NCBI GenBank assembly: GCA_965644495.1
Contig: CBFFSA010000010.1
Coordinates: forward strand, 372,001-436,000
DNA length: 64,000 bases
Origin: Perkinsela sp. CCAP 1560/9
Lineage: Eukaryota > Protista > Euglenozoa: Kinetoplastea
Direction: 5' to 3'
The notes under the pieces are model-generated. The model was not told the origin of the DNA, made no database searches, and saw only the letters and a list, made by a program, of their open reading frames with translations. Shown here piece by piece: positions 11,714-64,000 of the stretch; position 1 is the stretch's first letter, and every line of letters begins with the position of its first letter. The position numbers and the translations under genes are program-made.

Positions 11714-11737
11714 AAAGAAAGTTTCTGTACCTTGTTG
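11714..11737 (+). other. Spliced-leader exon relic (3' portion) at LINE 5' end
   Basis: aaagaaagtttctgtaccttgttg resembles the kinetoplastid SL exon 3' end (...ACAGTTTCTGTACTWTATTG). Not followed by GT. Confidence 0.8.
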
Positions 11738-11765
11738 TTTTCTTTTCCCTACCCTTTACAACGAC

Positions 11766-14700
11766 ATGTTTTGCTTACTACCAGGGAAGGGCACACACCA
11801 GGCGTCGCAGGACTCTCCTAAGAGACCACGCGACGTGTCTAACCAAAACAAAAACCTGTCCCTGAAAGGCACTCCCACAGACAGGGTTGCAAAATCTGCT
11901 ACCCGAACCGTCCAGGCTCTCATATCCCAAAAGAGCAATGAGTCCCTTACCAGCGACACAGGAGAAGCACCCCCAGCTCCATGCAAACATCCTTGTAAGG
12001 ACAAAAGCACCTGCGGACACCCCTGTTGCAAGAGGGGTGTAACGCGGCCACATATCCTGGTCACTCCTCACACAAACGAACTTCCCCCTCACCGCGTCCC
12101 CCCCACCACACAACAAACCGTTCCGGAATGCAAACACCGCTGCAAGGACAAAGCTCACTGTGAACACCCATGCTGCAAACGACACCTGGTACGCGTAGTA
12201 AAACCGGATACGTACAACAATAAGAGAAGTGACGCACCGGTGGATGCAAGAGAAGACGTAAAGGTGATCACGGCTGTGAGTGTAATGCCGGTACAACGTA
12301 GCACACCCTGTAAGCATGTCTGTAAAAACAAACAGACCTGCGGGCACCCATGTTGCAAACGTAATCTTACACCAACAACATACGAACTCACGAGCACTAC
12401 GGCGAGCGGTCAAGAATCCGGGCCCAAAGAAGCTCCAAGTACGCGACAAAGGGACGAAACGTCACCGCCATGCACCCGTGACCACGTAACACAGGATGTG
12501 AAAGTACCGAAATCAAGCAACCTACTTGGCATGGCAGCGCGAGCTGCAACACGATATCTGTTTTCAAGCCGCACTCAACCGTACGCTAACGGCACTCCCT
12601 CAACCCCGGCGGTAACCGTACGACCTCACAGCAGCACCGGACAGGAACGCTTGTCGTACACAATAGCACCCTGTCCAAAAGACGAACACGATTTACATGT
12701 ACCCCCACCCAAGGAGGTTGCTCCCCATCAAAAATCACCCACTGTTACCGTCGGTCGTGCCGTCGCATCAACTGCCTGCTCGCTTGCCAAATTCCTACTT
12801 TTCAAAGGCGTTCCATGTCAAACTCCGGACTCCCAAAGCCTCCCCAAACCTAAATCTCCAACACAACTTCAGGTCCACGCCTTAACTAGAGTATGCAAGC
12901 ATATCTGCAAGAGTAAAGATCAATGTAAGCACGTGTGTTGCAAGCAAGGCCTAGGCCCCGCCTCCGAACAAGCAGACCGTGTCGAGCCCTGTAAGCATAA
13001 ATGTAAGAACAAGGCAGGGTGCGGCCATCCTTGCTGCAAACGCACTGGCACACCGTTGACTTCGCTTGACACACCGATAAGCAAACTGGATGGGCAGGAT
13101 ACTCTACCCACCGGCCCATGTACCCTTCCCAAGAATCTCGTCACACCGTCCCTAAACACAACCACTACGACAGCTGACCGTGCCGTTGCCAGGGAACCAG
13201 CCATCCCGACTCCCAAAAACAAGGCACCGGAAAGTATCATTCTCTTGGACTCATCTTCCCCAGCACACCAACACAGTCCGCGGAATGAGAATGGCGATGA
13301 CGAAGTCCCATCCTGGGTTTTCCAACAAGCGCACAGCGTAGGTCGAATACAAAGCCCGCCGCTTGAACAAGGAAGCCTCTTACCCCCATCACAACTGGAC
13401 GCCCATTTACATTCGGATGAATCCGAGGGTCCCCAGATTCCCACACAAACTCCCGACAGCCCGTCACAGTATCTCCCGCCGCCCCAGGACCCCACGCATC
13501 CCGTAACCCATAACCGACACAAGCAACGTTTCCACTTTATCCAGTCCCGGTCAAAACCTGTCAAACTCCGCCTCGTCAACGACAACACATGGAGATATTT
13601 CCCGGATGTGCATGCAGCATGCGTAAGCCAACTTGTGCGTAGTCGTATCCCTTCCCCCCAGGGGGCTGAAGCCGCCCTGTCCAAAGCGCTCAATGGGAAA
13701 AGTGCAGCACACGACATCGTCGTAGAAACGTGTACCGTAGACGAACTTATGGAAAAGAGAGCGTGTGACTTTTTAGAAGTTAGTAGAGTAGACTCAACAA
13801 GTCACATTTCTCGCCACGCGAACTGGGTATCTCTTTTTCACGACAGCCGCCTGGAATTATACAACCACTACGCATCACCTAGCTCAATGGGTAAAGCGGT
13901 AAATAAGGTACTGAACGGGAGAGCGGTCCCTGGGTTATCGGCGTTTCGGATCGTTCTGCTCCTTCGCACCGACGACAAAGAAGAAGTACAGCCATCAAAG
14001 CCCCAAATGGTCCCAACACTTCCACCATACGAGATTATTTCGCGTGACCACGCCTCCTCCTTGAAGCGGACGCACCCATGCCAACATCGATGCATAAGTA
14101 AACTCAAATGCAGCCATCCATGCTGCAAAATCTATGGACCATCCCTCGATCAGGGAATCGAAGGAGACTCTGAGGGGAGCCCCAACGCAGGACAAGAGCA
14201 AGAACACCCCGAACTTAACCCCCCCACTTCCGCTTCCTCTCCGAGACCACTCGACGAGACGGAGTACCTTTTCCGCACGGCACGATACATCCAGGGGGGC
14301 AAGTTAAACATAAACTTGGCCGATGCGCACTGGCACGAGGTGGAACGTAGGGCCCTCCACAGATGCAACACCTTGCTCACTGTCTCTGGCGACGCACTCT
14401 CCGCCGTCCATAACGCAGAACTACTGAGTGCAATACTAGCGGTGTCGGCATATGAAGTGGCGCGAGACGTCGACTCCAGGAAGGGTTTCATTATCCGAAC
14501 GGCTCGAGGACACATAAAGGGGAAAGTCCGTCCATTAGAAAGCGAAAAAGTTGCCTTTTCCTTCTCTCGACATGTAAAACAACTACAAATGAAGCTGCGA
14601 TACACACACGGCAAGGCTCCCCGCATGGCGTTGAAACAAAAGATTAAGGAAACCAAAAAGGCGGAACGTATATACAGCGCAGAAGCCATGGCCCAAAAAC

Positions 14701-17216
14701 AGGAACTGGAAAGTCGCTGGGCACTTCAACAATTCAACCGCAATCCATGGACGGCTGCGAGTCAAACCTTGGACAAAAGGACAGAAGCAGAAAGTGTACC
14801 GGCCTATCCGACTTGCAATGTACAGAAAGTGGAAAGTGTGTTCACAACATTACTTACGGACCCCACTACAGTGCATCACTTACCACCCCACGACGTCCTC
14901 GGAAACCGTCCTCTGGCAGAAATGACCTGGGACGAACTGGCTTCAATCGACATTTCGAACGCTCTCACATCAAAGAAAAACAGCAGTGCTCCAGGCCAGG
15001 ACTCCATTACGTACCAGACTCTAAAGCGATGCCACAGCTCCCACACGCACATGGCAAACGTCTTCAACGCGCTAGTGCGCTTCAGCACATGTCCGACGTC
15101 ATGGAAAATATCCGTCACTCGCCTCATTTACAAAAAAGGGGAGCCTGACAACCCACAAAACTGGCGTCCCATCGGCCTGACTAGCGTACTAGGGAAACTC
15201 CTGCATTCCATCATCAGCCGGAAAATGACGAAATTCCTACTTGAAGCCTCTGTCATTGACCCCAAGATACAGAAAGGCTTTCTCCCCGCCATTAACGGTA
15301 CTCTCGAACATACGCAATCCCTCTCAGAGCTCCTACGCCACTACCGGAAGAACAAGTGGAACTACTGCATGGCCCAGCTAGACCTCAGTAACGCCTTTGG
15401 TTCAGTCCCCCGCAACATCATCTTTGAAGCACTGGAATGGGCGAGAATCTCCCCAAACATTATTAAATACGTCCAATGCTTATACACTGACGCAAGTACC
15501 CGCATTAAATGTTACGAAGGTCTGTCCAGCGCGATCCCAGCTAAACGAGGTGTCTTACAAGGTGACACTCTCTCTCCTACGCTCTTTCTGGTGATTATGG
15601 AGCTAGCCCTACGTTACATGGCAAAATCATTTCCCTCATTTGGATTGAACCTCCCTGGATTTCCAAAAAGCTTCCTAAAAGCGTACGCCGACGATCTCAC
15701 GGTCCTGACGAATAGTGAAAAAGAAATGCAACTGGCTGTTGAAACACTATCCACGGTACTGGGTTCGCTTGGCCTTTCCATCAACGTCAAAAAGTGCAGA
15801 GTCCAATGCATGGCGTCCAAGAAAAATGATGAACACCCCGGCTACATGACACGACGTCCTCAAATTTTCATCAAGAACGAAGCTATACCGCATATATGCG
15901 ACGAAGGAAGTACGTTTCTTGGCATGAATATTGCCCCCGGTTCTCAACAATCCCGAGCCCTTTTCACGAAAGTTAGGCCCTTATTGAAGCGATGGCTTCA
16001 TAACATTGACCAGTCGGCCCACGACCTCCCATCAAAAATTTGGATACATCAACACGCAATCATCTCTCGGCTACGCTTCACCTTTACTATACACCCATGT
16101 ATCACTCTAAACTTTATTTTACGCCTTCAGAAAATGTGTACTCACTCCCTGAAACGGTGGATCAATGCGGCTAGAACTACATGCAGCGAAGCAATCTACT
16201 CTCAGCGTGGATGGAACATCTGCAGCTTGTCCAGACTCTGGGAGGACTGTACAGCTGATCTTCTCTGTCAAATGAAGCGGTCCCGAGACCCGAACGTTAC
16301 CGCCGCACTGCAGGAAAGAATACGGGCTGAAGAACATAAGCGCAGGAAAGGCCAAATTCGACCAGCATGTGACATCACACACATACTGGACGATCGCGAT
16401 CTCGCAAAACGAACTCTTCTTGAGCTTAATGAGGACCGAATGATCAACGCACTACGCCGCAGGTCAACGTTCGCTATTCAGTGGTGGGATATAGCCTCCG
16501 AGGAAGAACAGGCGAAAGATTTCAGCGCCGCGATAAACGGATTACGTAGCACTTCCCTTAGCCGCTTCGCAACTTCTTTAATGGTACAAAACACTCTCCC
16601 TACTAGGACAATGCTGAGGACATGGGGAATTCACGGCACAGATACAGTACAATGCCGAATTTGTAAACAAGAACCGGAAACATTACGACACCTCTTATCC
16701 TCGTGCAAGGTATCACTAGAACAGGGACGTTACACATATCGCCACGATTGTGTACTCTCCACCTTTGCAAACGCGATACTCTCTTCCCCCCATACCGCAG
16801 AGGCACATTTTGATCTCCCACACCTACGTCAACTACCCGCATGGTGGTCCGACCTGGAAACACAGCTTCGCCCAGATGGAATCGTCAAACTCAACGACGG
16901 AACTGAATTTATCGTTGAGTTGACGATGCCCTGGGAGGAAAACGTACACGAAGCCCACTGCCGAAAAGTAGAAAAGTACATAAATATTCTACACCGACGA
17001 AAGATAAGGTACTCAGACTGCCACTTGATATGCTTTGAAGTTGGAGCTAGAGGTCTCCCTTCTACGACGCTGCGTCACATCAACCGTCTCTTTTTGGGTG
17101 ACAAGGCACTCTCAGATAAGTGCCGTGTCGAAGTCATCCGAACGGCGATCCGGAGCAGCTTTCAACTCTGGCTGAAAAGGGAATCCCCTTTATGGGACAA
17201 CCAAAGCTTTGGTTAG
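11766..17216 (+). CDS. Retrotransposon polyprotein, 1816 aa: 6 Cys/His motifs, RT, CCHC knuckle, restriction-like endonuclease
   Basis: APGQDSI, NWRPIGL, QKGF, LDLSNAFGSV, GVLQGDTLSP, AYADD; CRIC...HLLSSC, GRYTYRHDCVL, RPDG, ELTMPWE, KVEKY, EVGARG. Confidence 0.97.
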   Translation: MFCLLPGKGTHQASQDSPKRPRDVSNQNKNLSLKGTPTDRVAKSATRTVQALISQKSNESLTSDTGEAPPAPCKHPCKDKSTCGHPCCKRGVTRPHILVTPHTNELPPHRVPPTTQQTVPECKHRCKDKAHCEHPCCKRHLVRVVKPDTYNNKRSDAPVDAREDVKVITAVSVMPVQRSTPCKHVCKNKQTCGHPCCKRNLTPTTYELTSTTASGQESGPKEAPSTRQRDETSPPCTRDHVTQDVKVPKSSNLLGMAARAATRYLFSSRTQPYANGTPSTPAVTVRPHSSTGQERLSYTIAPCPKDEHDLHVPPPKEVAPHQKSPTVTVGRAVASTACSLAKFLLFKGVPCQTPDSQSLPKPKSPTQLQVHALTRVCKHICKSKDQCKHVCCKQGLGPASEQADRVEPCKHKCKNKAGCGHPCCKRTGTPLTSLDTPISKLDGQDTLPTGPCTLPKNLVTPSLNTTTTTADRAVAREPAIPTPKNKAPESIILLDSSSPAHQHSPRNENGDDEVPSWVFQQAHSVGRIQSPPLEQGSLLPPSQLDAHLHSDESEGPQIPTQTPDSPSQYLPPPQDPTHPVTHNRHKQRFHFIQSRSKPVKLRLVNDNTWRYFPDVHAACVSQLVRSRIPSPQGAEAALSKALNGKSAAHDIVVETCTVDELMEKRACDFLEVSRVDSTSHISRHANWVSLFHDSRLELYNHYASPSSMGKAVNKVLNGRAVPGLSAFRIVLLLRTDDKEEVQPSKPQMVPTLPPYEIISRDHASSLKRTHPCQHRCISKLKCSHPCCKIYGPSLDQGIEGDSEGSPNAGQEQEHPELNPPTSASSPRPLDETEYLFRTARYIQGGKLNINLADAHWHEVERRALHRCNTLLTVSGDALSAVHNAELLSAILAVSAYEVARDVDSRKGFIIRTARGHIKGKVRPLESEKVAFSFSRHVKQLQMKLRYTHGKAPRMALKQKIKETKKAERIYSAEAMAQKQELESRWALQQFNRNPWTAASQTLDKRTEAESVPAYPTCNVQKVESVFTTLLTDPTTVHHLPPHDVLGNRPLAEMTWDELASIDISNALTSKKNSSAPGQDSITYQTLKRCHSSHTHMANVFNALVRFSTCPTSWKISVTRLIYKKGEPDNPQNWRPIGLTSVLGKLLHSIISRKMTKFLLEASVIDPKIQKGFLPAINGTLEHTQSLSELLRHYRKNKWNYCMAQLDLSNAFGSVPRNIIFEALEWARISPNIIKYVQCLYTDASTRIKCYEGLSSAIPAKRGVLQGDTLSPTLFLVIMELALRYMAKSFPSFGLNLPGFPKSFLKAYADDLTVLTNSEKEMQLAVETLSTVLGSLGLSINVKKCRVQCMASKKNDEHPGYMTRRPQIFIKNEAIPHICDEGSTFLGMNIAPGSQQSRALFTKVRPLLKRWLHNIDQSAHDLPSKIWIHQHAIISRLRFTFTIHPCITLNFILRLQKMCTHSLKRWINAARTTCSEAIYSQRGWNICSLSRLWEDCTADLLCQMKRSRDPNVTAALQERIRAEEHKRRKGQIRPACDITHILDDRDLAKRTLLELNEDRMINALRRRSTFAIQWWDIASEEEQAKDFSAAINGLRSTSLSRFATSLMVQNTLPTRTMLRTWGIHGTDTVQCRICKQEPETLRHLLSSCKVSLEQGRYTYRHDCVLSTFANAILSSPHTAEAHFDLPHLRQLPAWWSDLETQLRPDGIVKLNDGTEFIVELTMPWEENVHEAHCRKVEKYINILHRRKIRYSDCHLICFEVGARGLPSTTLRHINRLFLGDKALSDKCRVEVIRTAIRSSFQLWLKRESPLWDNQSFG

Positions 17217-17301
17217 CAAATGGTCTAGCAGGCGACGTCATATGCGTACGTCCTGTTAGACTTTATTACTCTACAGGTAATGCCCTGTATAGATATAAAT
17301 A

Positions 17302-17583
17302 CTGCATGAAAATCTTTTTGTTGGGAGTATAAACTTAACCTGTCTCCCGAAAGAACTTACAGTTTTGCACTTGACCGGTAATAAGTTGAATGGTGAGTTG
17401 GTTCTGCGCTCCCTTCCGCCGTTTATGCGTACACCTTCCCTTGGGAACAACGCTTTTACGGGAAAAGTAGCATTTGACGCCTTACCAGCAACAATGAAAG
17501 ATTTGAATTTGAAAGGAAATATCTGCGATTTGGAAGTGCAGTCTTGGCCAATTCCAGAATGTGTTACAATTACTGTATTGTAG
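17302..17583 (+). pseudogene. LRR gene 3' part downstream of LINE
   Basis: Near-identical to 1232-1513. Confidence 0.9.
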
Positions 17584-17960
17584 CGCAGTACTTTAACTTT
17601 GTATGTTTTAGAAAAAAACAAATAAGGACAAAAATTCCACATGTACACATGTAGCTATATCAATTCTTACAGTGACGAGTTACAGTTAGATAATGTAGAG
17701 AAATTGTTTGCATGCAAATTCCTCGTCAAAAGGTTGGCTCCCAGTGTTGAACATGGTTAAGCAGTACAAAAGGGTTGGTTCAGTTTTCATCTAATGTAGG
17801 GGAGTCTGGTATTTTAGAAAACGAAAACAATATTTATAGAAACTGTGCAGCATGACGCCAAAACTGTACGGGAAAGCCTTTTTACCTTTCGATTTTGGAC
17901 TTTAAAAAATCGTATAAACATTCTGAAAACTCAAAGTATCGAGGATACGCTTTCTTCAAA

Positions 17961-24449: not shown

Positions 24450-25200
24450 TGAGTAGTTGTGCTTTGCGAGATTTGACGTATGTCGTATTGGTTCCAAAAG
24501 CCACATTTGTTGGTCTTCGTGTGATTCATTGGCCGTTTGGGTGGGGCTTTGCCATAAGCTCTTGCTGCTACCGGCAGGGCCAGCCACCAGCGAACGAAAA
24601 TCTCGCTTTTGACAATTCCTCTACAAATGATCGGGCGAACGGCACCCAAAACACATTCCTGGTCGTCGATATGGCTCAGGCGCGCGAGCTGGTGTAACTT
24701 GCGGAGTAAAGGAACGCTGCGATCGTGGTGTATGCTCAAGTTAAATGCTTTTGTCTTTCCGCCAACTGATCACTTACATGGTGGTAGAATTTATCGTTGG
24801 GACGCACAACAAGGTACGGATTGTGGCGCGAGGTCTTGGTGTTCCGTCCCTACCATATGACGATCCTTTCCGGCCTCACTTTGCAGAATCTGTCTCGCGT
24901 GAGGGCTACTGTTTCCGTCCAACGACTTGCTGCCTTCCAGCAGAGCACCACGGTAAGACCTTCGCTGCGGGGCAAGCTCTTCCACAACTTGTTCAGAGTT
25001 CCTGGGGTTAAAGGCAACATCTGACGCATCGGTACTGCCGCTCCGGCCGCCGCAAGTGACTTTATGTAGAACTTGAGCCGATTGGTCTGTGTCCCGCCAA
25101 GGTTTAACAGTGTAGCGCAGTGCGCCAGGAAGGATATACGGATTTGTCGGACGCGGATTATATTCCCATCGTACATGCTACAAATGACTTACATAGTTCA
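24450..25200 (-). mobile_element. TATE-like tyrosine-recombinase remnant
   Basis: LAAAGAAVPMRQMLPL...CWKAASRWTETVALT...PERIVIW*GRNTKTSRHNPY resembles the kinetoplastid TATE recombinase; interrupted by stops. Confidence 0.7.
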
Positions 25201-25526
25201 TGATACAGCATGGCCAGGGCCATGGATGCATGCTGGTAAATGGAGTCATGATTCATGATGCATCATGGGCATCGGGGTCCCACAGAATCCGCCACGGCTG
25301 GTGAGCAAGAGAGGTGCATGGAATATCCGCTAGAACACGCATACAACGTGTTTGCTCGCTGTGTGGGAGACTTCCAGCGTTTGGAAGCCTCCTGCGCGCA
25401 GAAGTACCGGTGCCGCGCGATGGGGAAGGCACGCCGCGTGGTCCCGTAGAAGGGTCCTGCAGCGCATGGGGACTCGGAACCGTGTTCCGAGCAGGGTGGT
25501 GGGAGATGAAGAAAGGGAGGCACACC

Positions 25527-25920
25527 AAAAAAAATCCAAATCATTCCGGATTGCTCCGGATGGTCACTGGCAAGCCAGACTCTTCACAGACAGATTTGGA
25601 AGTTCCGAGGCCGACGTCCTCTACCAGATTCCGCTTGTCCAAGGCGGCACCAACGTGCTGTTACCAGCACGCTGCGTCGACGAACTGTACGTCAACACGG
25701 CTTACTCCCAAGAGGTGTAAGCCGGGTAAGGGAGCTGGTTCCCTGAGGGGAGGGTCCGGGACGGTCCTCCGAGTACTGGGCCTAGTCGGTTATCAGCCCA
25801 GCCTCTTAGAGTGAATATTGCCGGGAATATTGCGATGAGCGGGTTTGAACTCGCCGTCTGAGCACCATGTGCATCAAGCTTTGAATTCTTGCCACTCCGC
25901 CTTCTCCGCCACCTCCGCCT
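25527..25920 (-). mobile_element. SINE-B with tRNA-like head
   Basis: Minus strand has an A-box-like ggcggagtggcaag and a B-box-like gagttcaaacc, a body shared with 22803-23028 and 57625-57985, and an oligo-T end. Confidence 0.7.
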
Positions 25921-25929
25921 TTGGAGGCG

Positions 25930-26090
25930 CACCCCTAATTTGTGACAAGAGGGACAGTTCCTCTCCTAGCGCCATCCGGAAACGGGCATGAACATAGTGA
26001 CAATATGTCCGTTTCCGAGAGAGAAAAGATGAACTAGGAGAAAAAGTACAACAAGGTACAGGAACTGTGTCTTTGAGAAACTGTATCAAT
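25930..26090 (-). mobile_element. SINE-A head with SL relic (26049-26074) and retained splice acceptor
   Basis: attgatacagtttctc-aaagacacagttcctgtaccttgttg-tactttttctcctAG-ttcatcttttctctctcggaaacggacat... Confidence 0.85.
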
Positions 26091-26700: not shown

Positions 26701-26736
26701 GGAGGTTGGTTGCCGAGTCCTATTGTTGTAGTGCTA

Positions 26737-31784: not shown

Positions 31785-32228
31785 ATGTCGCTCTATCCTC
31801 CGGGTTGTATTTTAGCTTGTCTCAGCAGCGATACAACCTTACCTCACCCCGCCAAAGTGAATGGTTCCGTTCTTCCCCAGAAATATGATTTTAGCAATCA
31901 TTTCGAATCCAGAAGAGACATGGACAACGAACACTACTGCGCGTGAATGGTTTGCAGTAAAGTGCAATAGCAACCAACAATGATTTCCATTGAACTAGTC
32001 CCGCAAGGTTTTTTTAACGTCCACGGGCATGATAAATATTGTGGAACATTTGCATGGATGTACATGCCGGACATCACACTATCGTTCTCTTCAAAAAAAC
32101 AAAGGGGGATCACCGGAGTGTTACCTATTGCACATCTCCCTGGATTGCTGCAAAGATTTGACGTTTTCAATTGTAATATGTTGGGCCCCATTGATTTGAC
32201 AGTGCTGCCGCCCCAATTATGGTTTCTA
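31785..32228 (+). pseudogene. LRR gene 5' part (frameshifted), interrupted by LINE copy 2
   Basis: Paralog of 38455-39117: PAKVNGSVLPQKY, NPEETWTTNTTA, DKYCGTFAW, IDLTVLPPQLWFL. Confidence 0.85.
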
Positions 32229-32245
32229 TAAAGATATTATGGCTT

Positions 32246-32275
32246 CTATAAAGATACAGTTTCTGTACCTTGTTG
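32246..32275 (+). other. Spliced-leader exon relic at LINE 5' end
   Basis: ctataaagatacagtttctgtaccttgttg is the closest match in the window to the kinetoplastid SL exon. Followed by ctttg, not GT. Confidence 0.88.
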
Positions 32276-35200
32276 CTTTGTACTAAACTTATCTTTCGGA
32301 GCATGATCTCTAATGTCACACCCCCAGCTCCCCACGCGCACGACGGCCTCCCTCGAGGACCTGTCAGCGCGAAGCGACACCCCCAGAACTTTCACTTCGT
32401 CCGAAGTCGTGCGGTGCCAGTGAAGATCCGCCCCTCTGATGGCTTTTCATGGTCCTATTTTCCCGACACGCACGCCGCAGCCATCACCCTTACCGAACGA
32501 GAGTTTTTCTCAAGCACGCACACAGCAGAAGCTTCCCTCGGAAAAACCCTGAAGTCGGGAAGCAAAAGGAGCGATGGTCCGATAGTACAAACGTGTACCA
32601 CTCAAGATGTCATCGAGAACGATGCATGCGAGTACGTTGAGTACCATGAAATTGGAAACCTTAGTCGCACATTTCATCACACGAGCTGGAGCTCTGCTTA
32701 TACAGACCCCGACATGCAGCTTGACACAGAATACTCCTCCTCGAACGCGCTTGGCAAAGCCGTCACAAAGAAATTGCGCGGCGGTGACATGCCAGGCTTA
32801 CGACGATTCCGCATATCACACGTGACCCGTAAGGCCCAACCCATTGAACAACTCCAACGTTGCTCGGAGGTCACATACGACGCGCCATATAGAATCCGTG
32901 ATGCTCCCGTCAAGGTGTCAAAACTACCGCCCACTAAACCAAGTGTCCCTTGTGCCCATAAATGCCGGGACAAAGCAGCATGCCTTCACGTATGTTGCAA
33001 AGTGAAACCCGAAAGGTCTGTGCATCCTAGCGTCCCTCCTCCCTCTTCGGAAGCCGTGGCTATAGACAGTTCACTAGCTCCCGGCAGAAGGCCCTGTAAG
33101 CATACGTGCCGCGACAAGACAAATTGTTTGCACCAGTGCTGCAAAATAGGAGTCCTCATTACGGGTGCTACTGAAAATCCTCGACCAGAACGGCACCTCG
33201 GGGAGTCATCACTAACACGGTCACATAGTCCACATCGATAGAAACCGATCCGCAAGTCTCGACAGAGGCCATACCGAGCGAAGAGGCCCAGTATGAGGAT
33301 CTGCCAACCGGTCATCCGCCGTCGTCCGCCATAATATCAGCAAACACGGCCAACTATCACCCGTGTCGGCACATACAATAAGTATGTATGCAGCAATAAA
33401 ACTCAGTGCAAACACCAATGTTGCAAGACAGGGGTCATGATCGTCGAAGAAAACGGTCAGAATCGAATATGGTCACTCAGGAATTTGTTTACGAGGACAT
33501 CTCCTGCCGATGCTAGCATAATATCACCACAGAATCACCCTAGCTGGCCATCCGAGACAGGAAACTTGAGCGGTACGCAGGCTGTAAACCACGAACTCTC
33601 TCATACACGCACTTCCCCGGAACCTCATGTTAGTAGAGATGGCAATATCCCCCCTGAATCAGTCCCTCGCCGTAATTGCGCACATAAATGTAAAGACAAA
33701 ACCAAATGTAAGCATTCATGTTGTCAAAAAGGAGTTCTCCTCAAAGCTGGCGAAATCGCATACTCTGCCATAAGCTGGACGGCGAAAAATATTCTATTCC
33801 CTGCGCTTGGTGATGCCGAACGCGCTGCAGTTTCTTCACAAGCTTCGGAACCGCCCGCCCCAGTCGTGACACCCCGCCTACCAGTTCGCACCAACTCCCT
33901 GCCCCGCACGAGTCCACTGTCCAGCCCTCTACGACATTTCCCACCAGCCCACGAGACGCAACCGGATTCCTCACCTTCTGTACCACGTATGGAATCCGTA
34001 GCAGAACCCGCGCCTTTGCCTTTGCCTTTACCTTTACCTCCCCCACCGGAAGTAAATCGCAGACGCACGACACTGCAGAGGATCCCTCGATCCCAGCACG
34101 CCCCAGCCCCAACCATTCATCCCATTCCTGACCTGCAGAATCTTCTCGAAACATTTGACACAATAACGGGAGGACGAGTTCTGGTACGTTTTACAGAGGA
34201 ACAGTGGGGCAATAGTATTGCGAAAATTGAGGAACGTTGCAACTTGTACGTGCACCCAGCGCGAAACGATGAGGATGCCCTGTCTCAAGCTAAAACATTA
34301 TCCGCGATCCTCGCCGTAACCGTCTTTGAAGCCGCACGGGAGAGCGACCCGACACACCGCTTTCTCCTGCGAACCAGAGCTGGCAGAGCCAGAAGAAACT
34401 CACGGCCCTTGGCCATCGAACGTACCACGAAGAGGCTTCGCACACATGTTCGTCAACTCAAACGTGCACTTACCTTCATGAAGGGGGCCGCGAGAAACAA
34501 GCAGCGAGGAGAAATTAAGGAAGCAGAGAAAGCGTTGAAGTTGTACGTGGAGGAAGCCAATCTACAGAAGAGGGAAATCGATCGACGATGGGCATTAACT
34601 CGGTTCCAGAGAAACCCGTGGACAGCTGCGGGCGAATGCCTAGATCGCACTGACCCAATCCAGGGACCCGAGACGTCTTACCCTACAGTACCTCTTCAAG
34701 AGGTTGAGAACTTCGCGGCATCATTGTCAAAACCTGAAGAGAATCACAGCATACCCCCCGCCGAGTTCTTCGGACCACGGCCTGACATCGACATGCCATG
34801 GTCGGATATTGACGCCGAAATGATAGCATCTGCTGTATCTTCCAAGCGCTCGGGCGCTGCTCCTGGATCAGACACTGTATCAAACGCTCTACTCAAGCGT
34901 TGTAGCCCTATCTTTGTCCACATAGCTCAAGTATTCAATGATATCCTTAAATTCGGGGTTTGCCCCCCCACCTGGAAATCTGCCGTAACTCGCCTCATAC
35001 ACAAAGGAGGTCCTACATCAACTATGGAGAATTGGCGGCCGATAAGCTTAACTAGTTGCATAAGGAAACTTTTCCATTCAATCCTGAGCCACCGAATCCT
35101 TCAACATTCCTTGGATTCTCATGCGCTCGATACATCAGTACAAAAAGGATTTCTACCACACATGAATGGGACCGTCGAGCATACACAAGTCTTATGCGAG

Positions 35201-35910
35201 CTCCTTGAACACCAACGACGTCACAAACGGCAATACTTACTGGCACAGTTCGATATCAAGAACGCTTTCGGATCTATCCCCCACGCAGTACTGTTACAAT
35301 CCCTAAAATGGGCCCGTGTCTCCCCAATTCTAATTAACTATATCAGCGCGCAGTATAAAGGAGCATCTATTCAAATCAAGTGTGCTGAAGGCCTTACGAA
35401 GTCGATCGAGATCGGCCGTGGAGTATTACAAGGAGATACACTGTCGCCGATCTTATTCAACTTGGCAATGGAATTGGTTCTTCGCTTCATCCGTTCAAGT
35501 TGCCCACAGTACGGAATCACTTGGGATGGAAAGGAAACCTTTCTGAAGGCCTTTGCTGACGACCTCAGTATACTCACGAACACACCAAAGGAAATGCAAA
35601 TTGCCACGAACGTACTGGTCAAAGTTCTAGGCGACATCGGAATGAAATTGAACGCAAAGAAATGTTGGATTCAACACATGGCAATGACTCAAGACTCAGG
35701 CTACATGACAAGACGACCGCAGATAATGATTGACGCAACACCTATTCCTCAAATATGCGATAATGGTAGCACATTCCTGGGTATGACTCTCGCACCTGGT
35801 GCCCAGCATGGTAAAATTCTGTTCCTAAAGCTACGCAATCGACTCCGTACCTGGTTACGCAACATATCTTCCAGCGCCCACGACCTACCCGCCCGACTCT
35901 GGATATACAA

Positions 35911-36813
35911 ATTTTCTTTTTTAGGCTCTTCGTTAAACGCGGTGGTTGCTTTCAACTTAGAAGTCACTCATGCTGCGCGCTTCGCGTTGAAAACTACCGC
36001 CGCGTTTAACGAAGAGCCTAAAAAAGAAAATTTAACCTGGAAAACGGAAAGATTATAGCCAAAAATAGCCGAATTTCGGGTACAAATGGGGTCATTTTCG
36101 CATATTTTTGCTCTCAGAGCACTAAATCCGACATTTGCGCGTGGGAAATCACTCGCAGGCATGAATGAAAGCCTACCGAACGTATTCGGTAAAGAATACG
36201 ACTCCAACCATACCATTCTTTCGACACAAAAATGCCCCTTTAGGTCCGAAAAATACTTTTTCACCTTTTTTAGTCAAAAATGTGTCATTTTGAGGGGCGC
36301 ACCACGGTTCGAAGAAGTGATACCTTGCGAAAACAACTGCGTAGAAAGCTAGTGTAGGTCCCAAACTATCAAAATACAATAGGGGAAACGATTTTGGAAA
36401 AATATTTTTTTTGTCATTTTTTTCGCCAAGTTGAATTTTTTTTCAAAAAAATTTTTCCGAAAAAATCCGAACTTGGCGGACCCGTCATGCGGATACGCGG
36501 GGGGGTCACCCCCGGGTAGGGGGGTGGAAAATACGCGCCAAGACCCCGGCTACCCTTTCTGCGGTTTTTTTTCGAAAACTAATTTTTTCGAAAAAATTTG
36601 CTCGACCATGCCCCCCCCCCCTGGACCCCCCCTCTGGACCCCCCCCATGGACCCCCCATTTTTTTCAAATTTTTTTTTCAGTTTTGGTCCACCGGAGCCC
36701 CCTTTTATATTTTTTTCTTCTATTATATTACTGTGTTCCTCTTTATATTTTCACTGTTTTTGTTCACTTTTTTTTCAATAATCGAGTGTAGAGCGGTAGT
36801 TTTACAACCACCG
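35911..36813. mobile_element. Non-coding insertion with terminal fold-back inside LINE copy 2
   Basis: RT frame WIY|..|NNGIISRLR is split, with caa repeated at both junctions. ~125 bp palindrome at the left end. Confidence 0.75.
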
Positions 36814-37902
36814 CAATAATGGTATTATCTCCCGCCTTCGCTACTCTTTTTTTGTCAATTCATGTCTGACTTTTAACCACGTTCTGCGCCTCCAGCGATG
36901 CGCTACAAATGAAATCAGAAAATGGTTAAATGTAGCAAAATCCGCGACAAGCGAACTGTTGTACACCGAGCATGGTTGGAACCTCGTTCAACTCACAATA
37001 ACGTACTACGACTTCTCGACAGTGAATATGAGAGGCATCTTTCGGAAGCCGTGCAAAGGCGCACTTTAGTTGCGGGAAGATGGTTCCGCGTAGCGACGGA
37101 AGCAGACCTCGCGAGGGACTTCGCTGCCGCCCTATGTAATCTCAAAAGCGAATCGCTATCACGATTTACGGCTTCCGTACTCACAGGAACGCCACTCCCC
37201 ACTAGAGTGTCTCTCCGCAAATGGGGCGTATCGACACACACAAGCGACAAGTGTCCCATCTGCGATACTGAAACGCGAACCGCGCGACATATTCTCTCCG
37301 GGTGTAGAAAAGCACTCGAGCAAGGACGATATACTCTGCGACATAACATGGTGCTACAAGCCCTCGCAAACTCTGTGCAGAAATTCCAAGGGACCAGTCT
37401 AGTCACTTTGACCTCCCTCACTTTCGCTCTACCCCTCCGTGGCTCACGGAACTCGACACCGAGCTGCGACCGGATGGGTGGGTGAAAATGTCCAACGGGG
37501 AGCAGTATATTATAGAATTGACGTGCCCCCTGGGAGGAAAATTTTGTCTACGCACACGAACGAAAAACTGCCTAGTACACAAATCTCTACCATTCCCGCA
37601 AGCTCACAAACCCGAGCACTTTCCTACTCGTTTTCGAAGTCGGAGCGAGAGGAAAAATAAGCAGTGCTGGTCGAACTCTGAACTCTCTATTTATGGGTAA
37701 TGATGAGCTGGTGGCTGAGTGCCGGCGCAATATGACCGTGAAGGCTCTGAGAGGGAGCTTCATAGTATATCAAAACCGCAATGACCAAAATTGGATGGAG
37801 GAGAACGTTCTTGGTGACGCTGGATAGAAACAGGTGACTAAAACGCGTTTTGTGCGCGTTTTCACCACATAAATCTCTGCAGGATTACCTGTATGATACA
37901 AT

Positions 37903-37965
37903 ATATTTCATCACAATAAGTTCAGTGGTATACTGGATCTCACATCACTCCCTGCAAATTCACAG
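37903..37965 (+). pseudogene. LRR continuation downstream of LINE copy 2
   Basis: IFHHNKFSGILDLTSLPA aligns with NIRANQFNGALDLTSLPV, the next residues in the paralog. Confidence 0.8.
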
Positions 37966-55507: not shown

Positions 55508-55519
55508 TCGTTGGAGAAG

Positions 55520-57624: not shown

Positions 57625-57990
57625 CAAAATCCAAATCAGTCCGGATTTCCCCGGACGGGCACTGGCAAGCCACACCCTTCACAGACAGATTTGGAAGTTC
57701 CGAGGCAGATGTCCTCTTCCATGTCAGGTGTTATGCGATAAGCGAGAATCGAACTCGCCGTCTAAGCACCATGTACTCCATTCTTGCCATTCGCTCCCTA
57801 CTACCCTTGTGCCCCCCTACCCTAGAGCCCGCTGAAATAGGTTCGGAAATCTTTACGGCTAATTCGAACCCCGCTCATCGTATAATACCCGGCGGCCTCA
57901 CTCTAAGAGGGCTGGGCCGAGATCCGACCAGGCCTGGTACTGGAAGGACTGTCCCGGACCTTCCCCTCAGGGAACCAGCTCCCTCAAGCT
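57625..57990. mobile_element. Two rearranged SINE-B fragments in opposite orientation
   Basis: 57625-57800 (minus) carries the tRNA-like head joined to the 3' end; 57862-57985 (plus) carries the B-box and body. Confidence 0.7.
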
Positions 57991-58344
57991 GTGTGAAGGG
58001 CCTAGCTTATCAGTGACAGTCCGTGGCAATCTTGAATAATTGGGATTCGATTTCGGATATCACAAGGGAGATACCGGTTTTCTTGTGGGAATCTGCCGCA
58101 CTTGCCCTCTTGGTATCTCCCTCGCCCACTTTAGACTGGATATTTTTTAATCCATAAACATTTTCTGAATTAGGATATCATAGTAACGCTGGATGAACAT
58201 CCTAATTGGACGAATATCCTAATTCAGGATATTCCGAATTAGGATGGTGATCCGAAGGATAGTGATCACCGAATTAGGACAGTTCTGAATTAGGATATCT
58301 GACCCTCGTTTAATACTATAGAATAACACTCGTACATCGTGTAA

Positions 58345-59433: not shown

Positions 59434-59739
59434 GGTATTAGAGAATAAAATTAATTTCCTTTCGTGGACGATAATATGCTACGGGTGAGACTACAACAAG
59501 CTTTTCACCATAATAACGGTGGATCAACGCACGAACTGTATACATACCCCCTGTATATCCATGTACTTTGCGTACTGTGTTTATAGTGCGAAAAACTAAA
59601 GCATAATTTTTTTATGCTCTTGATTGAAAAATACGATGAAAATGTAAGGACAATAATTTTAGCGATTTGGACAGTGTGAGTATCTTCTCGTAAGCTTTTG
59701 GAAATATATGTCTTCTGTATAAGATACCCCAACCTCCAC

Positions 59740-60603: not shown

Positions 60604-61009
60604 AGAAGAGGGCAGGGATCACCGTAGATGTCTCTAGGATTGCCGATGGAAGGTAATGGGCAATAATGGGTACATCTTTGAGAGACGAGAGTTGACGTGA
60701 GTGGATAATGCCGCAGCTACTGTCGTATATTGGAGCTCCACGTCTTTTGTATTTTATATTACTCACATGTAGTATCGAATATTTTGTCTTGTATTGGCTT
60801 CTGTCGTGTATGTATGATAGGGGTGCAATGATTGATCCGCTTTGTAAGCACGTTTCATGGGATCAATTCCGCAGTTTCCTTTTCTAAGCGTACGGTACAA
60901 ACCATAGTAAACTCTTATATTCTTAATACTAAAATCAGTATAATAAAAAGAAGAATAATATTCTTTTTTTCAATATATACATTGGAGGGTTGAAAATCTT
61001 GTTTCGAAT

Positions 61010-64000
61010 GGTTGTGCCGCAAAAGTACTGGAGCTCACATTCTGAAATCGGGGCGACCCGATACCGGAGGCCGGCTGCCTTTTCCAACTCGGCGTCCCGC
61101 ATGTAGTAGGACGGCTTGATCGATTTTGAGATTTCTGAGAATTTGCCACTATAGTGACCTTTAGTGACCGGGATACTGGGAATTAGGCCTCCATCTTGGC
61201 TATGGCGCCATGGATCCTGAAGGCGAAAATTCCCTAGGCGATTCCCTATGGCGAAAGGGATTGGGGTCGTGGTTTGCTTGGTGTCGACTTGATTTACCCT
61301 CCGGGAGCTCATAATGGATGTGCCTCCTCCCAGAGGTTGCTAGTCTTCCCACTTTTCTTTCTCCTCGAAACCGAGAAGTTTCGGGTCTCCCTTTAGGGCC
61401 CGGAAGAGAGCTTACCGCGAGATGCTATTGAAAGCATTTTCAAGGTCTGCAGCCACAATGACAACCTCCGGTCTGTCTCGAAAATGCTGTCGGGCATTCT
61501 GTAAATGCTTAGACGATGTGCTCACACCGTTGAGTATACACGTTGTATTGGGATCCAAACTGTATCCCTTGAAATTGTGGACAATGTGTTTGCAGCCCTG
61601 AGTGTATTGCGCTCCGAATTGGGGAGGAAGGTCCCCCCTGTTGGATGCAGGCGTTCCGCCTGTTCGAGGGCAGCCGTGGCGTTGGCCGGGGGATCTTGCG
61701 GCCGCCCTCGAGAAAGCTCCCGCCCTTACGAGCTCCTCCGCTCGTTTTATTGCTGACATGGGGGATCTATTTTCCGCGGTGGGGGTCGGAGCCAAGGTTT
61801 CCGACCGCTCGAGGTGGGGACGCATACGAAATTCGCGTGCTAGATGTCGTTGTGACAGCGTATCCTCAGGGAAGAAGAGGAAGCGTTTGACTACGAGGAG
61901 GAGGAGGAGGAGGTTCCATGCAATTACGATTCTCTCCTCTTGCGATTTGAAGTGGGAGTTGTGACAAACGCTAGCCACGTACTCCCGCCAGGCGGGGCAT
62001 TGCACCTCATACAAATATATAATTTTCGCAAGGACTCCCTCCCCAATAGCTCCGCCAGACTTTCGGGGAAGGGGGCTTATCCTAGCTCCTCGGTTTGAGC
62101 GACTTGGGTTTGTGGGTTCGCCTCCTATCGGGGGCATACAAATGTATGTCTTGGACTGAGTCTCCGTCCCGGGCCGTAGTGTGGGGAGGGCTGGCGACGT
62201 TGGGCGCGGTCGCAATGCCCTCCAAGATCGTCTCGCTGGCCAGTGGGGTGGCCCGCCCTTGGAGGGGGATTTCTATGGCGGCGTCCCGGGTTGGCTTCAA
62301 TGTAGCCCCTGCGCAGGTTGCACTTGATTATATGGGCGGACCGTCCTGTTTCGCTGATGAGGGATTCGGAAGATAAGAAGCTCCATAAAATCCCGTCCTC
62401 GTATTCCTTGGGCTTCCAAGCTACGGTTAGGATATCGAGAATTCCTATTTGTTTGCTGAGGAAGGCAGGGATAACATGTGCGGCTCCTATGCCCGGCGCT
62501 AAGAGGCTGCCTTGGAATGTACCGTCGTACACTCGTATTGCTTTGGTGTCGATGTATCCTGTGCTGCCTGGTGGTAGGGTCAGGCGTACAGAGATCCTTT
62601 GGGCGCATTTTGTTGTTGTTTTTTCATGCACTTATAGTGCAGAGATTTGCCTCACTACATGTCCTTACCCCGCATACGACGGGTGGATCACGTGAGAGTT
62701 CGCCTTCGCCTGTGGCAAGAGGGTGCAGAGAGCTGGCGTCCCAGGTGCAGAGAGCTCGGTTGTCATGTGCAGGTGCAGAGAGCCGGATGCGTAATCCCCA
62801 TATTACAGTTTCGGGGGCAATCCGGGTGAAGAGAGCTGCGACAGAGCCGAGGTGCGGAGAGCTGGGTGACCGCCAGGTGCGGAGAGCCGGAAGTCGTAGC
62901 GAAGGACACGTCTAGTGGTCCTCAAGGGAGGCCACCGTGACGCATTGCCTCCTCGGAAAGGTAGACACGAGAAAGAAAAGCCGAGAGAGGGAAGCACACT
63001 CACTCCAGGAGAGTGAGTCGGGGAGGGGCGAAGGGTGAAAGGCGCGTCCCCTGCTTCAACGAAAAGAGGGACAGTCCCGACCTTAGTGCCGGGGAGGGGT
63101 GATGGGGTAGAAGCGCGTCCCCTACTTCGCCGAGAAAGAGGAACAGTTTCAGCCTTAGTGCCGGCCGGCAACGGGCATATGAACAGTTAGACTATGCCCG
63201 TTGCCGGGGAAAGAAAGGATGAACAACAAGGTACAGAAACTGTATCTTGTACAGAAACTCTCCCGATCTGTAATGTGGGTCACTTCCCCAGATGTGTCCT
63301 TGAGGAGTAGGCTCTCGTCGGGCACCCCAATGGTATACCCCACGATCCCCAGGATGTCTGAAAAGGAGGTTGAAGCTTCGCAAGGAACTCGAATTCGTCC
63401 GGCCCGTTCGGGGCCAAGGTCTAGGGTAATGAGTATACCTTCGCCCCGTAATCCAGGGGGCTGCCCTCCTCGGGCGCGTAAATTGGCGCGAAGCTATGCG
63501 GGTGTGATCCTGGATCTGGTCCCGGTGTAGGGTTAAAGTGGAAGGCAGGGGTGTGGAAGTGGTGCTGTGGAGGTAGAGAAGTGGTGCTGTGGAGGCCATG
63601 GAGGATTTGCTTCGAGAGTGGGGAATCCTGCTGTAGGGAGTTGCGCTGCCACGAAGAAACATTCTTTGAAGAGGCTCAGGAACTCCGACCAGCCTTCTCG
63701 TTTGAGGGCGTAGGCGCCCCGGGCATGACTTCCCAAAAGTTCGTACAATGCTTTCCGAGTGCGCTTCGGGGCGTGTACGTTTAGGATGTGGGCCTGCAGG
63801 CCTATGAGGTGTTGATGTGCGGCTCCCCAGAATGTCTGAAAAAGAGGTTAATGCGTCACATGCAGACCAGTTGGGTAGCCGTTGGGGCTTTCCCTAACGC
63901 GGCCTCACAGAGGTTGCGTGGGGCTGCTCGTTGGCTTACATGCCCTGGGGTCGGCCCTGTAGGGCGTTCTTCACCTTGGCCTGCATGCCCTCGGCCTTGT
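61010..64000 (-). mobile_element. Decayed CRE-like LINE (N-terminus to partial RT)
   Basis: AIKRAEELVRAGAFSRAA, PPQFGAQYTQGC, AADLENAFNSISR, PWRHSQDGGL; homologous to 22560-24350. Confidence 0.75.
62610..63260 (-). mobile_element. SINE-A, full-length copy beginning with SL relic (63224-63248)
   Basis: gagtttctgtac-aagatacagtttctgtaccttgttg-ttcatcc...; ends aaatctctgcactataagtgcatga-aaaaacaacaac. Confidence 0.92.

What the first reader, a model, noticed from the sequence alone, without database searches (positions are those of the whole stretch)
11714..63260. Retroelements mobilised as SL trans-spliced RNA: spliced-leader relics cap four element 5' ends
Both long LINEs (11714-11737, 32246-32275) and two SINE copies (26049-26074 and 63224-63248, minus) start with the consensus AAAGATACAGTTTCTGTACCTTGTTG. 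This matches the conserved 3' part of the kinetoplastid SL exon (…ACAGTTTCTGTACTWTATTG). Similarity stops at the exon-terminal TTG, and no GT donor follows. The flanks are LRR or other element sequence, not SL arrays. Known SL-associated elements (SLACS, CZAR, CRE, NeSL) insert into SL genes. Here the simplest reading is that the elements are transcribed passively, get their 5' end from trans-splicing rather than a promoter or ribozyme, and the leader is reverse-transcribed into DNA. I do not know of this being described for a kinetoplastid LINE/SINE pair.
Basis: partly seen in the sequence, partly recalled or inferred. Interest (0 to 1): 0.93.

Follow-up and report, generated by a model that had tools for sequence, protein, structure and literature searches.

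The report
Host spliced-leader relics capping retroelement 5' ends
In this kinetoplastid genome, two LINEs and two SINE-like elements in the window (and about 540 elements genome-wide) begin with a DNA copy of the host's own spliced-leader mini-exon, which shows they were copied back into DNA from trans-spliced RNA; this has been described for dinoflagellate genes, but I found no report of it for kinetoplastid mobile elements.

Summary

- **Host SL:** the motif is the 3' part of the host's own SL exon. The true SL RNA gene is a 297-bp tandem pair on contig 1, next to a 5S gene, and its exon ends GTACCTTGTTG|GTATGAG.
- **Genome-wide count:** the genome holds 549 copies of the 20-mer. Only 8 are followed by the intron, and only 2 have the SL promoter-proximal sequence.
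- **What follows the relic:** in every other copy examined (73 distinct sites), the exon end is fused directly to a retroelement 5' end. At least 32 different downstream sequences were seen.
- **The window's elements:** the LINEs are R2-like, with RT, a CCHC knuckle and a restriction-like endonuclease. The SINE-like elements share the LINEs' 3' hairpin module.
- **Evidence for splicing:** 11 stacked relics join a full exon end to a second relic exactly after the only two AG dinucleotides in the SL; neighbouring offsets are rare or absent. A shorter SINE form (15 copies) starts right after a polypyrimidine-AG inside the long form.
- **Other species:** distant LINE relatives on metagenome contigs carry relics of other kinetoplastid SLs, and these match real environmental SL genes.

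No RNA data were available. The sharp 5' stop near SL nt 11 in this LINE/SINE class is unexplained. First-stage readers flagged the same phenomenon elsewhere in this genome; none of those notes had been followed up.

The parts
11714..11737 (+). SL relic at the 5' end of LINE1 (imperfect in its first 6 nt; the last 18 nt are identical to the host SL exon end)
   Evidence: boundary from the empty-site joint
11714..17301 (+). LINE1: a full-length RLE-type non-LTR retrotransposon inserted in an LRR-type gene. It has no poly(A) tail and ends in a hairpin + ATAGATATAAATA module.
11766..17216 (+). Intact 1816-aa ORF of LINE1. It has an N-terminal array of five Cys-rich repeats, an RT domain (aa 1123-1355), a CCHC knuckle and a restriction-like endonuclease (RPD...E...K) aligned to R2 proteins.
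32248..32275 (+). 28-nt SL relic (SL nt 11-38, 28/28 identical to the host exon) at the 5' end of LINE2
32228..32247 (+). Stutter upstream of LINE2: a duplicated flank plus a partial SL piece (ATAAAGAT)
32248..37908 (+). LINE2: a degenerate RLE-type LINE of a second family. Its ORF is in pieces and it carries foreign repeats at about 35910-36820. The 3' end is a hairpin + ATGATAC... module.
26049..26074 (-). SL relic (2 mismatches) at the 5' end of a SINE-like element; junction form SL|TAC...
26076..26087 (-). Partial SL piece (GATACAGTTTCT) stacked upstream of the relic
25114..26074 (-). SINE-like non-autonomous element (subfamily of the copy in L023), interrupted by another repeat of about 390 bp at about 25526-25919
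63224..63248 (-). SL relic (25 nt, exact) at the 5' end of a SINE-like element. Junction form SL|TTCATCC, which is the position right after the polypyrimidine-AG of the long SINE form.
63249..63259 (-). Partial SL piece (AGTTTCTGTAC) stacked upstream of the relic
62608..63248 (-). Full-length SINE-like element (about 640 nt). Its 5' part resembles subfamily A and the rest subfamily C. The 3' end is a hairpin + ATGA + A-rich tail.

Best explanation
The four motifs are DNA relics of the host's spliced-leader (SL) mini-exon.

Proposed mechanism:
1. The elements are RLE-type (R2-like) LINEs and the non-autonomous SINE-like elements that share the LINEs' 3' hairpin module. They are transcribed as part of host transcription units. 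This step is inferred.
2. Their RNA receives the 38-nt SL by ordinary trans-splicing at a polypyrimidine-AG acceptor. This step is inferred from the DNA signatures.
3. The element's reverse transcriptase copies the RNA, including most of the leader, into the new insertion. The exon-exact junctions without intron show this.
4. A relic-bearing copy can be transcribed again and trans-spliced at an AG inside its relic or inside its 5' UTR, then retroposed again. The AG-specific stacked relics and the shortened SINE form show this.

In this LINE/SINE class, copying or joining usually ends near SL nt 11, so the relic is about 28 nt long.
For: 1. **Host SL identity.** The SL RNA gene in L003/L004 has the exon followed by GTATGAGAAGC..., as a 297-bp tandem pair next to a 5S rRNA gene.
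2. **Numbers.** There are 549 hits of the 20-mer. Only 8 are followed by the intron, and only 2 have the SL promoter-proximal sequence.
3. **Diversity of partners.** In a sample of 75 distinct sites, the exon end is fused to 32 different downstream 10-mers.
4. **The relic belongs to the insert.** A SINE copy sits inside a (GT)n tract in L047, and a LINE does the same in L072. LINE1 has an empty-site form.
5. **The relic is a constant feature.** All 14 SINE copies ascertained by body sequence on contigs 1-3 carry the relic.
6. **Splicing signature in stacked relics.** Exon end joined to SL nt 23-38, after ACAG|, gives 9 hits (7 exact), one of them on a SINE. Exon end joined to SL nt 17 onward, after AAAG|, gives 2 exact hits. 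Controls at offsets -1, +1 and -4 give 1 exact (3 with up to 1 mismatch), 0 and 0.
7. **Shortened SINE form.** SL|TTCATC/TTAATC occurs in 15 copies from two subfamilies. It begins right after the ...TTTTCCCTTTAG of the long form, which has 99 copies.
8. **Other hosts.** LINE relatives at 28-31% identity on other contigs (L073, L074) carry relics of different SLs ending CTTTATTG. These equal the exons of real environmental SL RNA genes.
9. **Element type.** RT + CCHC + RLE is aligned to R2 proteins. The LINEs and SINEs share a 3' module with compensatory stem changes.
Against: - No RNA data were found. All runs located were contigs, and none is on record as RNA.
- The junction SL|GTAC... has no AG, so a relic-bearing copy cannot be re-spliced at the same point. 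How the dominant form keeps propagating is not shown. Master copies without a relic, or collapse of stacked repeats, are possible.
- Several variant junctions are not preceded by AG in the sister copies I could see: LINE2 family SL|CTTTGTAC, SL|ATTTGTAC, and the poly(A)-class SL|TTTTCTTCC.
- No SINE or LINE of this class has a full-length SL. This could also mean the 28-nt relic is inherited.
- A few relic point mutations are shared by pairs of copies. That fits inheritance of relics, but the excess over chance is not significant.
- The SL array is probably collapsed in the assembly, so absence of masters inside SL genes is not proven.
Confidence: 0.85

Rival explanations
1. Capture followed by inheritance. 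The SL was captured by trans-splicing only occasionally. In most cycles the 28-nt relic is simply part of the element, transcribed from a start at or near SL nt 11 (an internal, Pr77-like start, or a precise 5' processing site). Host trans-splicing would then not be the normal way the 5' end is made.
For: - The relic length is sharply modal at 28 nt, and no copy of this class has a full SL.
- The dominant junction lacks an AG, so it cannot be regenerated by splicing at that point.
- Pairs of copies share the same relic point mutation.
- Trypanosomatid ingi/L1Tc elements are known to use an internal 5' promoter that gives unspliced transcripts (PMC1874656, abstract seen).
Against: - The same 28-nt mode is seen in independent families with unrelated 5' UTRs: LINE2 and SINE subfamilies A, B and C. 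This points to a property of the copying machinery rather than to one master copy.
- Relics are identical to the present host SL, although neighbouring 5' UTRs are diverged beyond alignment.
- Relatives in other hosts carry those hosts' SLs.
- AG-specific stacked relics prove that re-splicing of relic-bearing copies does occur.
- Stuttered partial SL pieces upstream of many copies look like template jumps at a strong stop.
Confidence: 0.25
2. 5' transduction. Master copies sit in SL RNA genes just behind the exon, as SLACS/CZAR/CRE sit in SL genes. They are transcribed from the SL promoter, and the exon is carried along as upstream flank.
For: - These LINEs carry a restriction-like endonuclease, as the SL-gene-specific CRE and NeSL elements do.
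- The assembled SL array is tiny (2 genes), so most of it may be missing.
Against: - The SL promoter-proximal 31-mer is found only at two intact genes, each followed by the intron.
- The other intron-bearing copies are 5'-truncated retropseudogenes.
- More than 30 different element 5' ends would all have to sit exactly at the exon-intron border.
- This model does not explain junctions after AG inside relics, or the junction after the internal polypyrimidine-AG of the SINE.
Confidence: 0.04
3. Chimeric retrocopies. The reverse transcriptase reaches the 5' end of an unspliced element RNA and then switches template to SL RNA or to a free SL exon, as in U6-L1 chimeras. The leader would then never have been part of the element RNA.
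For: - Template jumping clearly happens here. Stuttered partial SL pieces and SL fragments lie upstream of full relics.
- SL RNA itself is retroposed.
- Some variant junctions are not preceded by AG in sister copies.
Against: - A switch to SL RNA would begin at its 3' end and include the intron, which is never seen at element 5' ends.
- The free exon is a short-lived spliceosomal intermediate.
- Stacked-relic junctions are concentrated exactly after the two AGs of the SL, and the short SINE form begins after a polypyrimidine-AG. That is what a 3' splice site predicts; a template jump does not predict it.
Confidence: 0.06

Closest known systems
Relic spliced leaders of dinoflagellate retrogenes (mRNA recycling; described in PMC3942190, PMC5585692, PMC6050394, PMC12014239)
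   Same: - A DNA-encoded copy of the host SL lies at the 5' end of sequences that went through a trans-spliced RNA and reverse transcription.
- Truncated relics are stacked behind a newer SL, because the relic holds an AG that serves as acceptor.
   Different: - The host here is a kinetoplastid.
- The carriers are the retrotransposons themselves (autonomous RLE LINEs, SINE-like partners and poly(A)-tailed modules) rather than host genes.
- Stacking is rare: 11 of about 540 copies.
- The RLE class keeps only about 28 nt of the leader.
SL-gene-specific RLE retrotransposons: SLACS, CZAR, CRE1/CRE2 (CRE clade) and NeSL-1
   Same: - They are non-LTR elements with an RT followed by a CCHC knuckle and a restriction-like endonuclease.
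- They live in SL-trans-splicing hosts and are physically associated with SL sequence.
- The poly(A)-tailed elements seen elsewhere in this genome also appear to land inside SL relics.
   Different: - In the known elements the SL is the insertion target. The element interrupts an SL RNA gene, and exon remainder plus intron follow its 3' end (my knowledge of the family; named as site-specific in PMC4728078).
- Here the exon-only relic is fused to the element's own 5' end, and the copies lie in LRR-type genes, microsatellites and other elements.
- Clade membership by RT phylogeny was not tested.
R2 elements (rDNA-specific RLE LINEs)
   Same: - They give the best sequence matches among solved structures (E 7e-31, RT through RLE).
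- They are promoter-less elements that depend on host co-transcription, with an RNA-processing step that defines the 5' end.
- Their 5' junctions are variable, with short duplications.
   Different: - R2 defines its 5' end with a self-cleaving ribozyme and is specific for 28S genes (my knowledge of the family).
- Here the host trans-splicing machinery appears to do that job, and insertion is dispersed.
ingi/RIME and L1Tc/NARTc LINE-SINE pairs of trypanosomatids with the Pr77 5' signature
   Same: Both are kinetoplastid pairs of an autonomous LINE and a short non-autonomous partner, with a shared short 5' signature.
   Different: - Pr77 is an element-encoded internal promoter that gives unspliced transcripts (PMC1874656, PMC8190864).
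- Those elements carry an APE-type endonuclease.
- Here the shared 5' signature is the host's SL exon, and the endonuclease is restriction-like.

Membership tests
RLE-bearing non-LTR retrotransposons (R2 supergroup) | Reverse transcriptase followed by a CCHC zinc knuckle and a PD-(D/E)xK restriction-like endonuclease; no N-terminal APE endonuclease | tested here: met
   Pfam RVT_1 hits at 1e-28 and 5.5e-30, with no Exo_endo_phos hit. The alignment to R2 proteins runs through C-x2-C...H-x4-C, RPD, E and K motifs.
CRE clade / SL-gene-specific elements (SLACS, CZAR, CRE1/2) | Insertion at a fixed site inside the SL RNA gene exon, with the rest of the gene (exon remainder and intron) flanking the element | tested here: not met
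   The window copies lie in LRR-type genes. The relic ends at the exon end and no intron follows. The SL promoter 31-mer occurs only at two intact genes.
CRE clade / SL-gene-specific elements (SLACS, CZAR, CRE1/2) | Placement inside the CRE clade in an RT phylogeny with reference elements | not tested
   No named CRE, SLACS or CZAR reference sequence was returned by any search, so no tree was built.
Relic-SL retrocopies (dinoflagellate-type recycling of trans-spliced RNA) | A DNA-encoded leader identical to the host SL exon, ending exactly at the exon end, without intron, at the 5' end of the retroposed unit | tested here: met
Relic-SL retrocopies (dinoflagellate-type recycling of trans-spliced RNA) | Stacked, 5'-truncated relics whose junctions lie at an AG acceptor inside the older relic | tested here: met
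   There are 9 and 2 junctions after ACAG| and AAAG|. Neighbouring offsets give 1 exact (3 with up to 1 mismatch), 0 and 0.
Relic-SL retrocopies (dinoflagellate-type recycling of trans-spliced RNA) | Transcripts that carry a new SL in front of the relic | not testable with these tools
   No RNA run was available.
LINE/SINE partnership | A non-autonomous element that shares the 3' recognition module of the autonomous LINE and lacks its ORF | tested here: met
   All share the motif TCTCTG + 5-6 bp hairpin (with compensatory stems) + ATGA + A/T tail. The SINE is about 565-640 nt long, and tblastn with the LINE proteins found no match in it. Which LINE mobilises it was not determined.
ingi/L1Tc-type elements with Pr77 | The 77-nt Pr77 signature at the 5' end and an APE endonuclease | tested here: not met
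   There is no APE domain. The shared 5' signature is the SL exon, and the downstream 5' UTRs of LINE1, LINE2 and the SINE are unrelated. The Pr77 sequence itself was not compared, because no reference was in hand.

The most novel reading that the evidence does not exclude
The SL relic may be more than a scar. It could act as a portable 5'-end cassette that lets promoter-less retroelements persist in a genome transcribed as polycistrons.

- Its pyrimidine-rich 3' half and its two AGs would form a mobile trans-splice acceptor, so every new copy is re-capped wherever it lands.
- Collapse of the resulting 16-nt direct repeat during reverse transcription would restore a single leader.
- For the poly(A)-tailed SL-site-specific elements of the same genome, each relic would also be a new landing pad. 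That would explain the head-to-tail stacks.
Probability: 0.3. Interest if true: 0.85.

Novelty: new variant of a known kind. Interest (0 to 1): 0.75.

Why it matters
**Element biology.** It would show how non-LTR retrotransposons obtain a defined, capped, translatable 5' end in organisms that lack gene-specific promoters. They would borrow the host's trans-splicing reaction, where R2 uses a ribozyme and ingi/L1Tc use an internal promoter.

**A built-in marker.** The relic tags RNA-mediated duplication in a kinetoplastid genome, as DinoSL relics do in dinoflagellates. It therefore makes the rate, sources and recycling of retroposition directly countable.

**A natural record of reverse transcription.** About 540 copies record how reverse transcriptases read the hypermodified 5' end of the SL. 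One class stops at nt 3, with T written in place of the gene's A at nt 2. The other stops at about nt 11.

**Generality.** Related LINEs on environmental contigs carry the SLs of other kinetoplastids, so the habit is probably old and widespread among free-living kinetoplastids.

Tried and rejected
- **Rfam on the window:** no hit at gathering thresholds.
- **First SL-gene pattern:** it was one base out of register and found nothing. This was corrected from the loci.
- **RNA evidence:** The one possible RNA run (X5) covers only the empty-site form. Expression is therefore untested.
- **Fetching more of the genome:** The census rests on pattern counts plus a sample of 75 sites.
- **Target-site duplications and a target motif for the SINE:** none were evident in 15 aligned copies. 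The resemblance of the LINE1 target to the SL (AAAGAC..TTTCTG) may be chance and was not pursued.
- **Relic derived from the target site:** rejected, because relic-bearing copies lie inside (GT)n tracts.
- **Relic conservation versus body divergence, as a test of renewal:** abandoned. The loci were ascertained by exact relic match, and the body-ascertained copies could not be fetched.
- **Shared relic mutations:** 3 coincidences were seen against about 1.5 expected, which is not significant.
- **Naming the LINE clade:** homology searches returned no named CRE/SLACS relatives.
- **Naming the organism:** run labels are coded.
- **Literature:** seven full-text searches, one rejected query and five papers consulted found dinoflagellate relic-SL retrogenes and SL-gene-specific elements. 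They found no description of SL relics on kinetoplastid retroelements, and no paper holding this SL sequence.
Full report
**Observation**

A shorter 19-mer adds 11719-11737 (+). Shuffled sequence gives no matches. At all four places similarity ends at the terminal TTG, and what follows is element sequence, not intron.

- The LINE1 relic is damaged in its first six bases.
- The LINE2 relic is 28 nt long, from 32248.
- The copy at 63224 starts at AAGAT.
- Each of the two minus-strand copies, and LINE2, has a further partial SL piece just upstream.

**The host leader**

A genome-wide search found 549 copies of the 20-mer. Among the first loci fetched was the real SL RNA gene. It is a 297-bp tandem pair on contig 1 in which the exon is followed by GTATGAGAAGC... 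and a short structured intron ending in a T-run. A 5S rRNA gene lies beside it.

The exon resembles kinetoplastid SL genes found in metagenomes, which have the same core and the same GTATGAG intron start. Its 3' end is unusual: CCTTGTTG in place of CTTTATTG. The relics in the window carry exactly this host-specific ending.

Only 8 of the 549 copies are followed by the intron. Only the two tandem genes have the promoter-proximal sequence. Four of the other intron-bearing copies start at SL nt 3 or nt 5 behind unrelated DNA, and the one read in full ends in an A-rich tail; these are retropseudogenes of the SL RNA itself. The remaining two were not resolved.

**What the elements are**

- **LINE1** spans 11714-17301. 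Its boundaries are confirmed by contigs of three public runs that join 11713 to 17302 without the element.
- Its intact 1816-aa ORF has an RT domain. The C-terminal part aligns to R2 proteins through the CCHC knuckle and the RPD...E...K endonuclease motifs. There is no APE domain. The N-terminus holds five Cys-rich repeats.
- **LINE2** (32248 to about 37908) belongs to a second family, 44% identical in the RT. It is degenerate and carries foreign repeats.
- **The two minus-strand elements** are SINE-like. They belong to a family of about 565-640 nt with at least three subfamilies. A body search gave 206 candidate places, and 40 scored copies are 93-100% identical.
- LINE1, LINE2, another LINE 3' end (L026) and the SINEs end in the same module: TCTCTG, a 5-6 bp hairpin whose stems differ by compensatory changes, ATGA, and an A/T-rich tail without poly(A). 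This supports a LINE/SINE partnership.

**The relic is part of the inserted element and is a constant feature**

- One SINE copy and one LINE copy lie inside (GT)n tracts, with the relic directly abutting the repeat.
- All 14 SINE copies found by body sequence on contigs 1-3 have the relic: 12 exact and 2 with one mismatch.
- In a sample of 75 distinct sites, the exon end is joined to 32 different downstream 10-mers.

Two classes appear in that sample:
- **RLE LINE/SINE class:** relics of 20-31 nt with a sharp mode at 28 (start ATAAAGAT). No copy reaches further than ACGATAAAG.
- **Poly(A)-tailed modules:** relics of nt 3-38. There are 281 such near-full relics genome-wide, and they often sit directly behind the poly(A) of the preceding module. 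One 9.7-kb locus is a stack of four such modules. One encodes a 1328-aa RT protein, and the others encode short ORFs.

**Evidence that the leader came by trans-splicing**

1. The junction is exon-exact in dozens of unrelated elements.
2. The SINE exists in a long form (SL|GTAC..., 99 copies) and a short form (SL|TTCATC or TTAATC, 15 copies in two subfamilies). The short form begins immediately after the ...TTTTCCCTTTAG of the long form, which is what use of that polypyrimidine-AG as acceptor predicts.
3. The SL has only two AG dinucleotides, and stacked relics sit on them.
   - A complete exon end joined to SL nt 23-38 (after ACAG|) occurs 9 times, 7 of them exact. One instance is on a SINE at contig 1:4017994.
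   - A complete exon end joined to SL nt 17 onward (after AAAG|) occurs twice.
   - The neighbouring offsets -1, +1 and -4 give 1 exact (3 with up to one mismatch), 0 and 0.
   - This is the signature known from dinoflagellate recycled mRNAs (PMC3942190, PMC5585692). It shows that relic-bearing copies are transcribed, trans-spliced again and retroposed again.
4. Distant relatives of LINE1 on two metagenome contigs begin with relics of other leaders ending CTTTATTG, fused to their 5' UTRs without intron. These relatives are 28-31% identical; one has a 1850-aa ORF and the other an ORF1+ORF2 layout. Real SL RNA genes with exactly those exons, followed by GTATGAG... introns, exist on 45 metagenome contigs. 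Each lineage therefore carries its own host's leader. Three further relatives that do not look kinetoplastid have none.

**Rivals**

- **Masters inside SL genes (5' transduction).** Not supported, because the promoter-proximal sequence occurs only at the two intact genes. The array is probably collapsed in the assembly, so this is not final.
- **Template switching to SL RNA.** This would bring in the intron, which is never seen. It also does not predict AG-specific junctions.
- **Capture once, then inheritance from a start near nt 11.** This is the serious open alternative.
  - For it: the 28-nt mode, the lack of an AG at the dominant junction, and a few shared relic mutations.
  - Against it: the same mode in unrelated families, identity to the present host SL beside unalignable UTRs, the host-specific relics of relatives, and the stuttered SL pieces that look like template jumps at a strong stop.
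  - I rate the general reading (leader acquired by trans-splicing and reverse-transcribed) at 0.85. The claim that this happens in every cycle is no better than even.

**Unexplained**

- The strong stop near SL nt 11 in the RLE class.
- Variant junctions not preceded by AG in the sister copies I could read.
- The T written at SL nt 2 in about 17 of 31 near-full relics, where every assembled SL gene has A.

**Comparison with the literature**

Seven full-text searches and five papers consulted turned up three relevant bodies of work:
- relic SLs of dinoflagellate retrogenes;
- SL-gene-specific CRE-clade elements, including in Bodo saltans (PMC4728078) and Diplonema (PMC10161547);
- the Pr77 promoter of ingi/L1Tc (PMC1874656, PMC8190864).

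None describes host SL relics at the 5' ends of kinetoplastid retroelements, and no paper holds this SL sequence. The library is incomplete, so this is absence of evidence only.

First-stage readers of this scan noted the same phenomenon at other places in this genome. None of those notes had been followed up.

**Verdict**

It is best filed as a new variant of a known kind: relic-SL retroposition, here applied to RLE LINEs and their SINE partners in a kinetoplastid. RNA evidence is the missing piece.

Noticed in passing
L061:1480-9719 (contig 2, about 553-563 kb): A head-to-tail stack of four modules. Each has a near-full SL relic, a short 5' UTR, an ORF and poly(A). One encodes a 1328-aa RT protein; the others encode ORFs of 165, 247 and 432 aa. 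At 8151-8220 an SL 1-21 piece, a poly(A) run and SL 8-38 suggest insertion into a relic with a 14-bp duplication of SL nt 8-21.
   Followed up: partly
L066:1480-1600; also contig 25:23935, contig 20:10944, contig 49:34386: Retropseudogenes of the SL RNA itself, holding both exon and intron. They start at SL nt 3 or nt 5 behind unrelated DNA. L066, the one read in full, ends in an A-rich tail.
   Followed up: partly
near-full relics in L009-L062: About 17 of 31 near-full relics read T at SL nt 2, where all assembled SL genes read A. This may be a reverse-transcription signature of a modified cap-proximal base, or an unassembled SL gene variant.
   Followed up: partly
window:11960-13100 (LINE1 ORF aa 70-440): Five copies of a Cys-rich motif (C-K-H-x-C-K-x-K-x2-C-x-H-x-C-C-K) lie in the N-terminal half of the LINE1 protein, with no Pfam match. 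tblastn with this part of LINE1 also matched repeatedly in the LINE2-family copies in L025, L030 and L057.
   Followed up: no
L003:2225-2343: A 5S rRNA gene lies next to the SL RNA gene pair, on the opposite strand.
   Followed up: no
window:952-1151: A run of N (a withheld stretch) lies inside the LRR-type paralogue that serves as the empty-site comparison for LINE1.
   Followed up: no
window:31226-31452: A G-rich 12-nt-period repeat tract (GGGGTAGGGG-like) lies just upstream of the LRR gene that holds LINE2.
   Followed up: no
window:35910-36820: Foreign repeats are inserted in LINE2. They have long C and G runs and T/A runs, and pieces recur in L008, L046, L028 and L059.
   Followed up: no
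window:25531-25626 and 57626-57721; L066:1900-2000: Another dispersed repeat. One copy interrupts the SINE at 25114-26074, and one lies beside the SL RNA retropseudogene in L066.
   Followed up: no
L044 and L045 (contig 1:2476148-2494500): A 5093-bp tandem repeat. Each unit holds an SL relic plus about 10 nt, bracketed by a 23-nt direct repeat.
   Followed up: no
L095:2230-2290 (JGI metagenome contig): A further environmental example: an SL relic starting at ACGCTAT, with the exon end fused to non-intron sequence.
   Followed up: no
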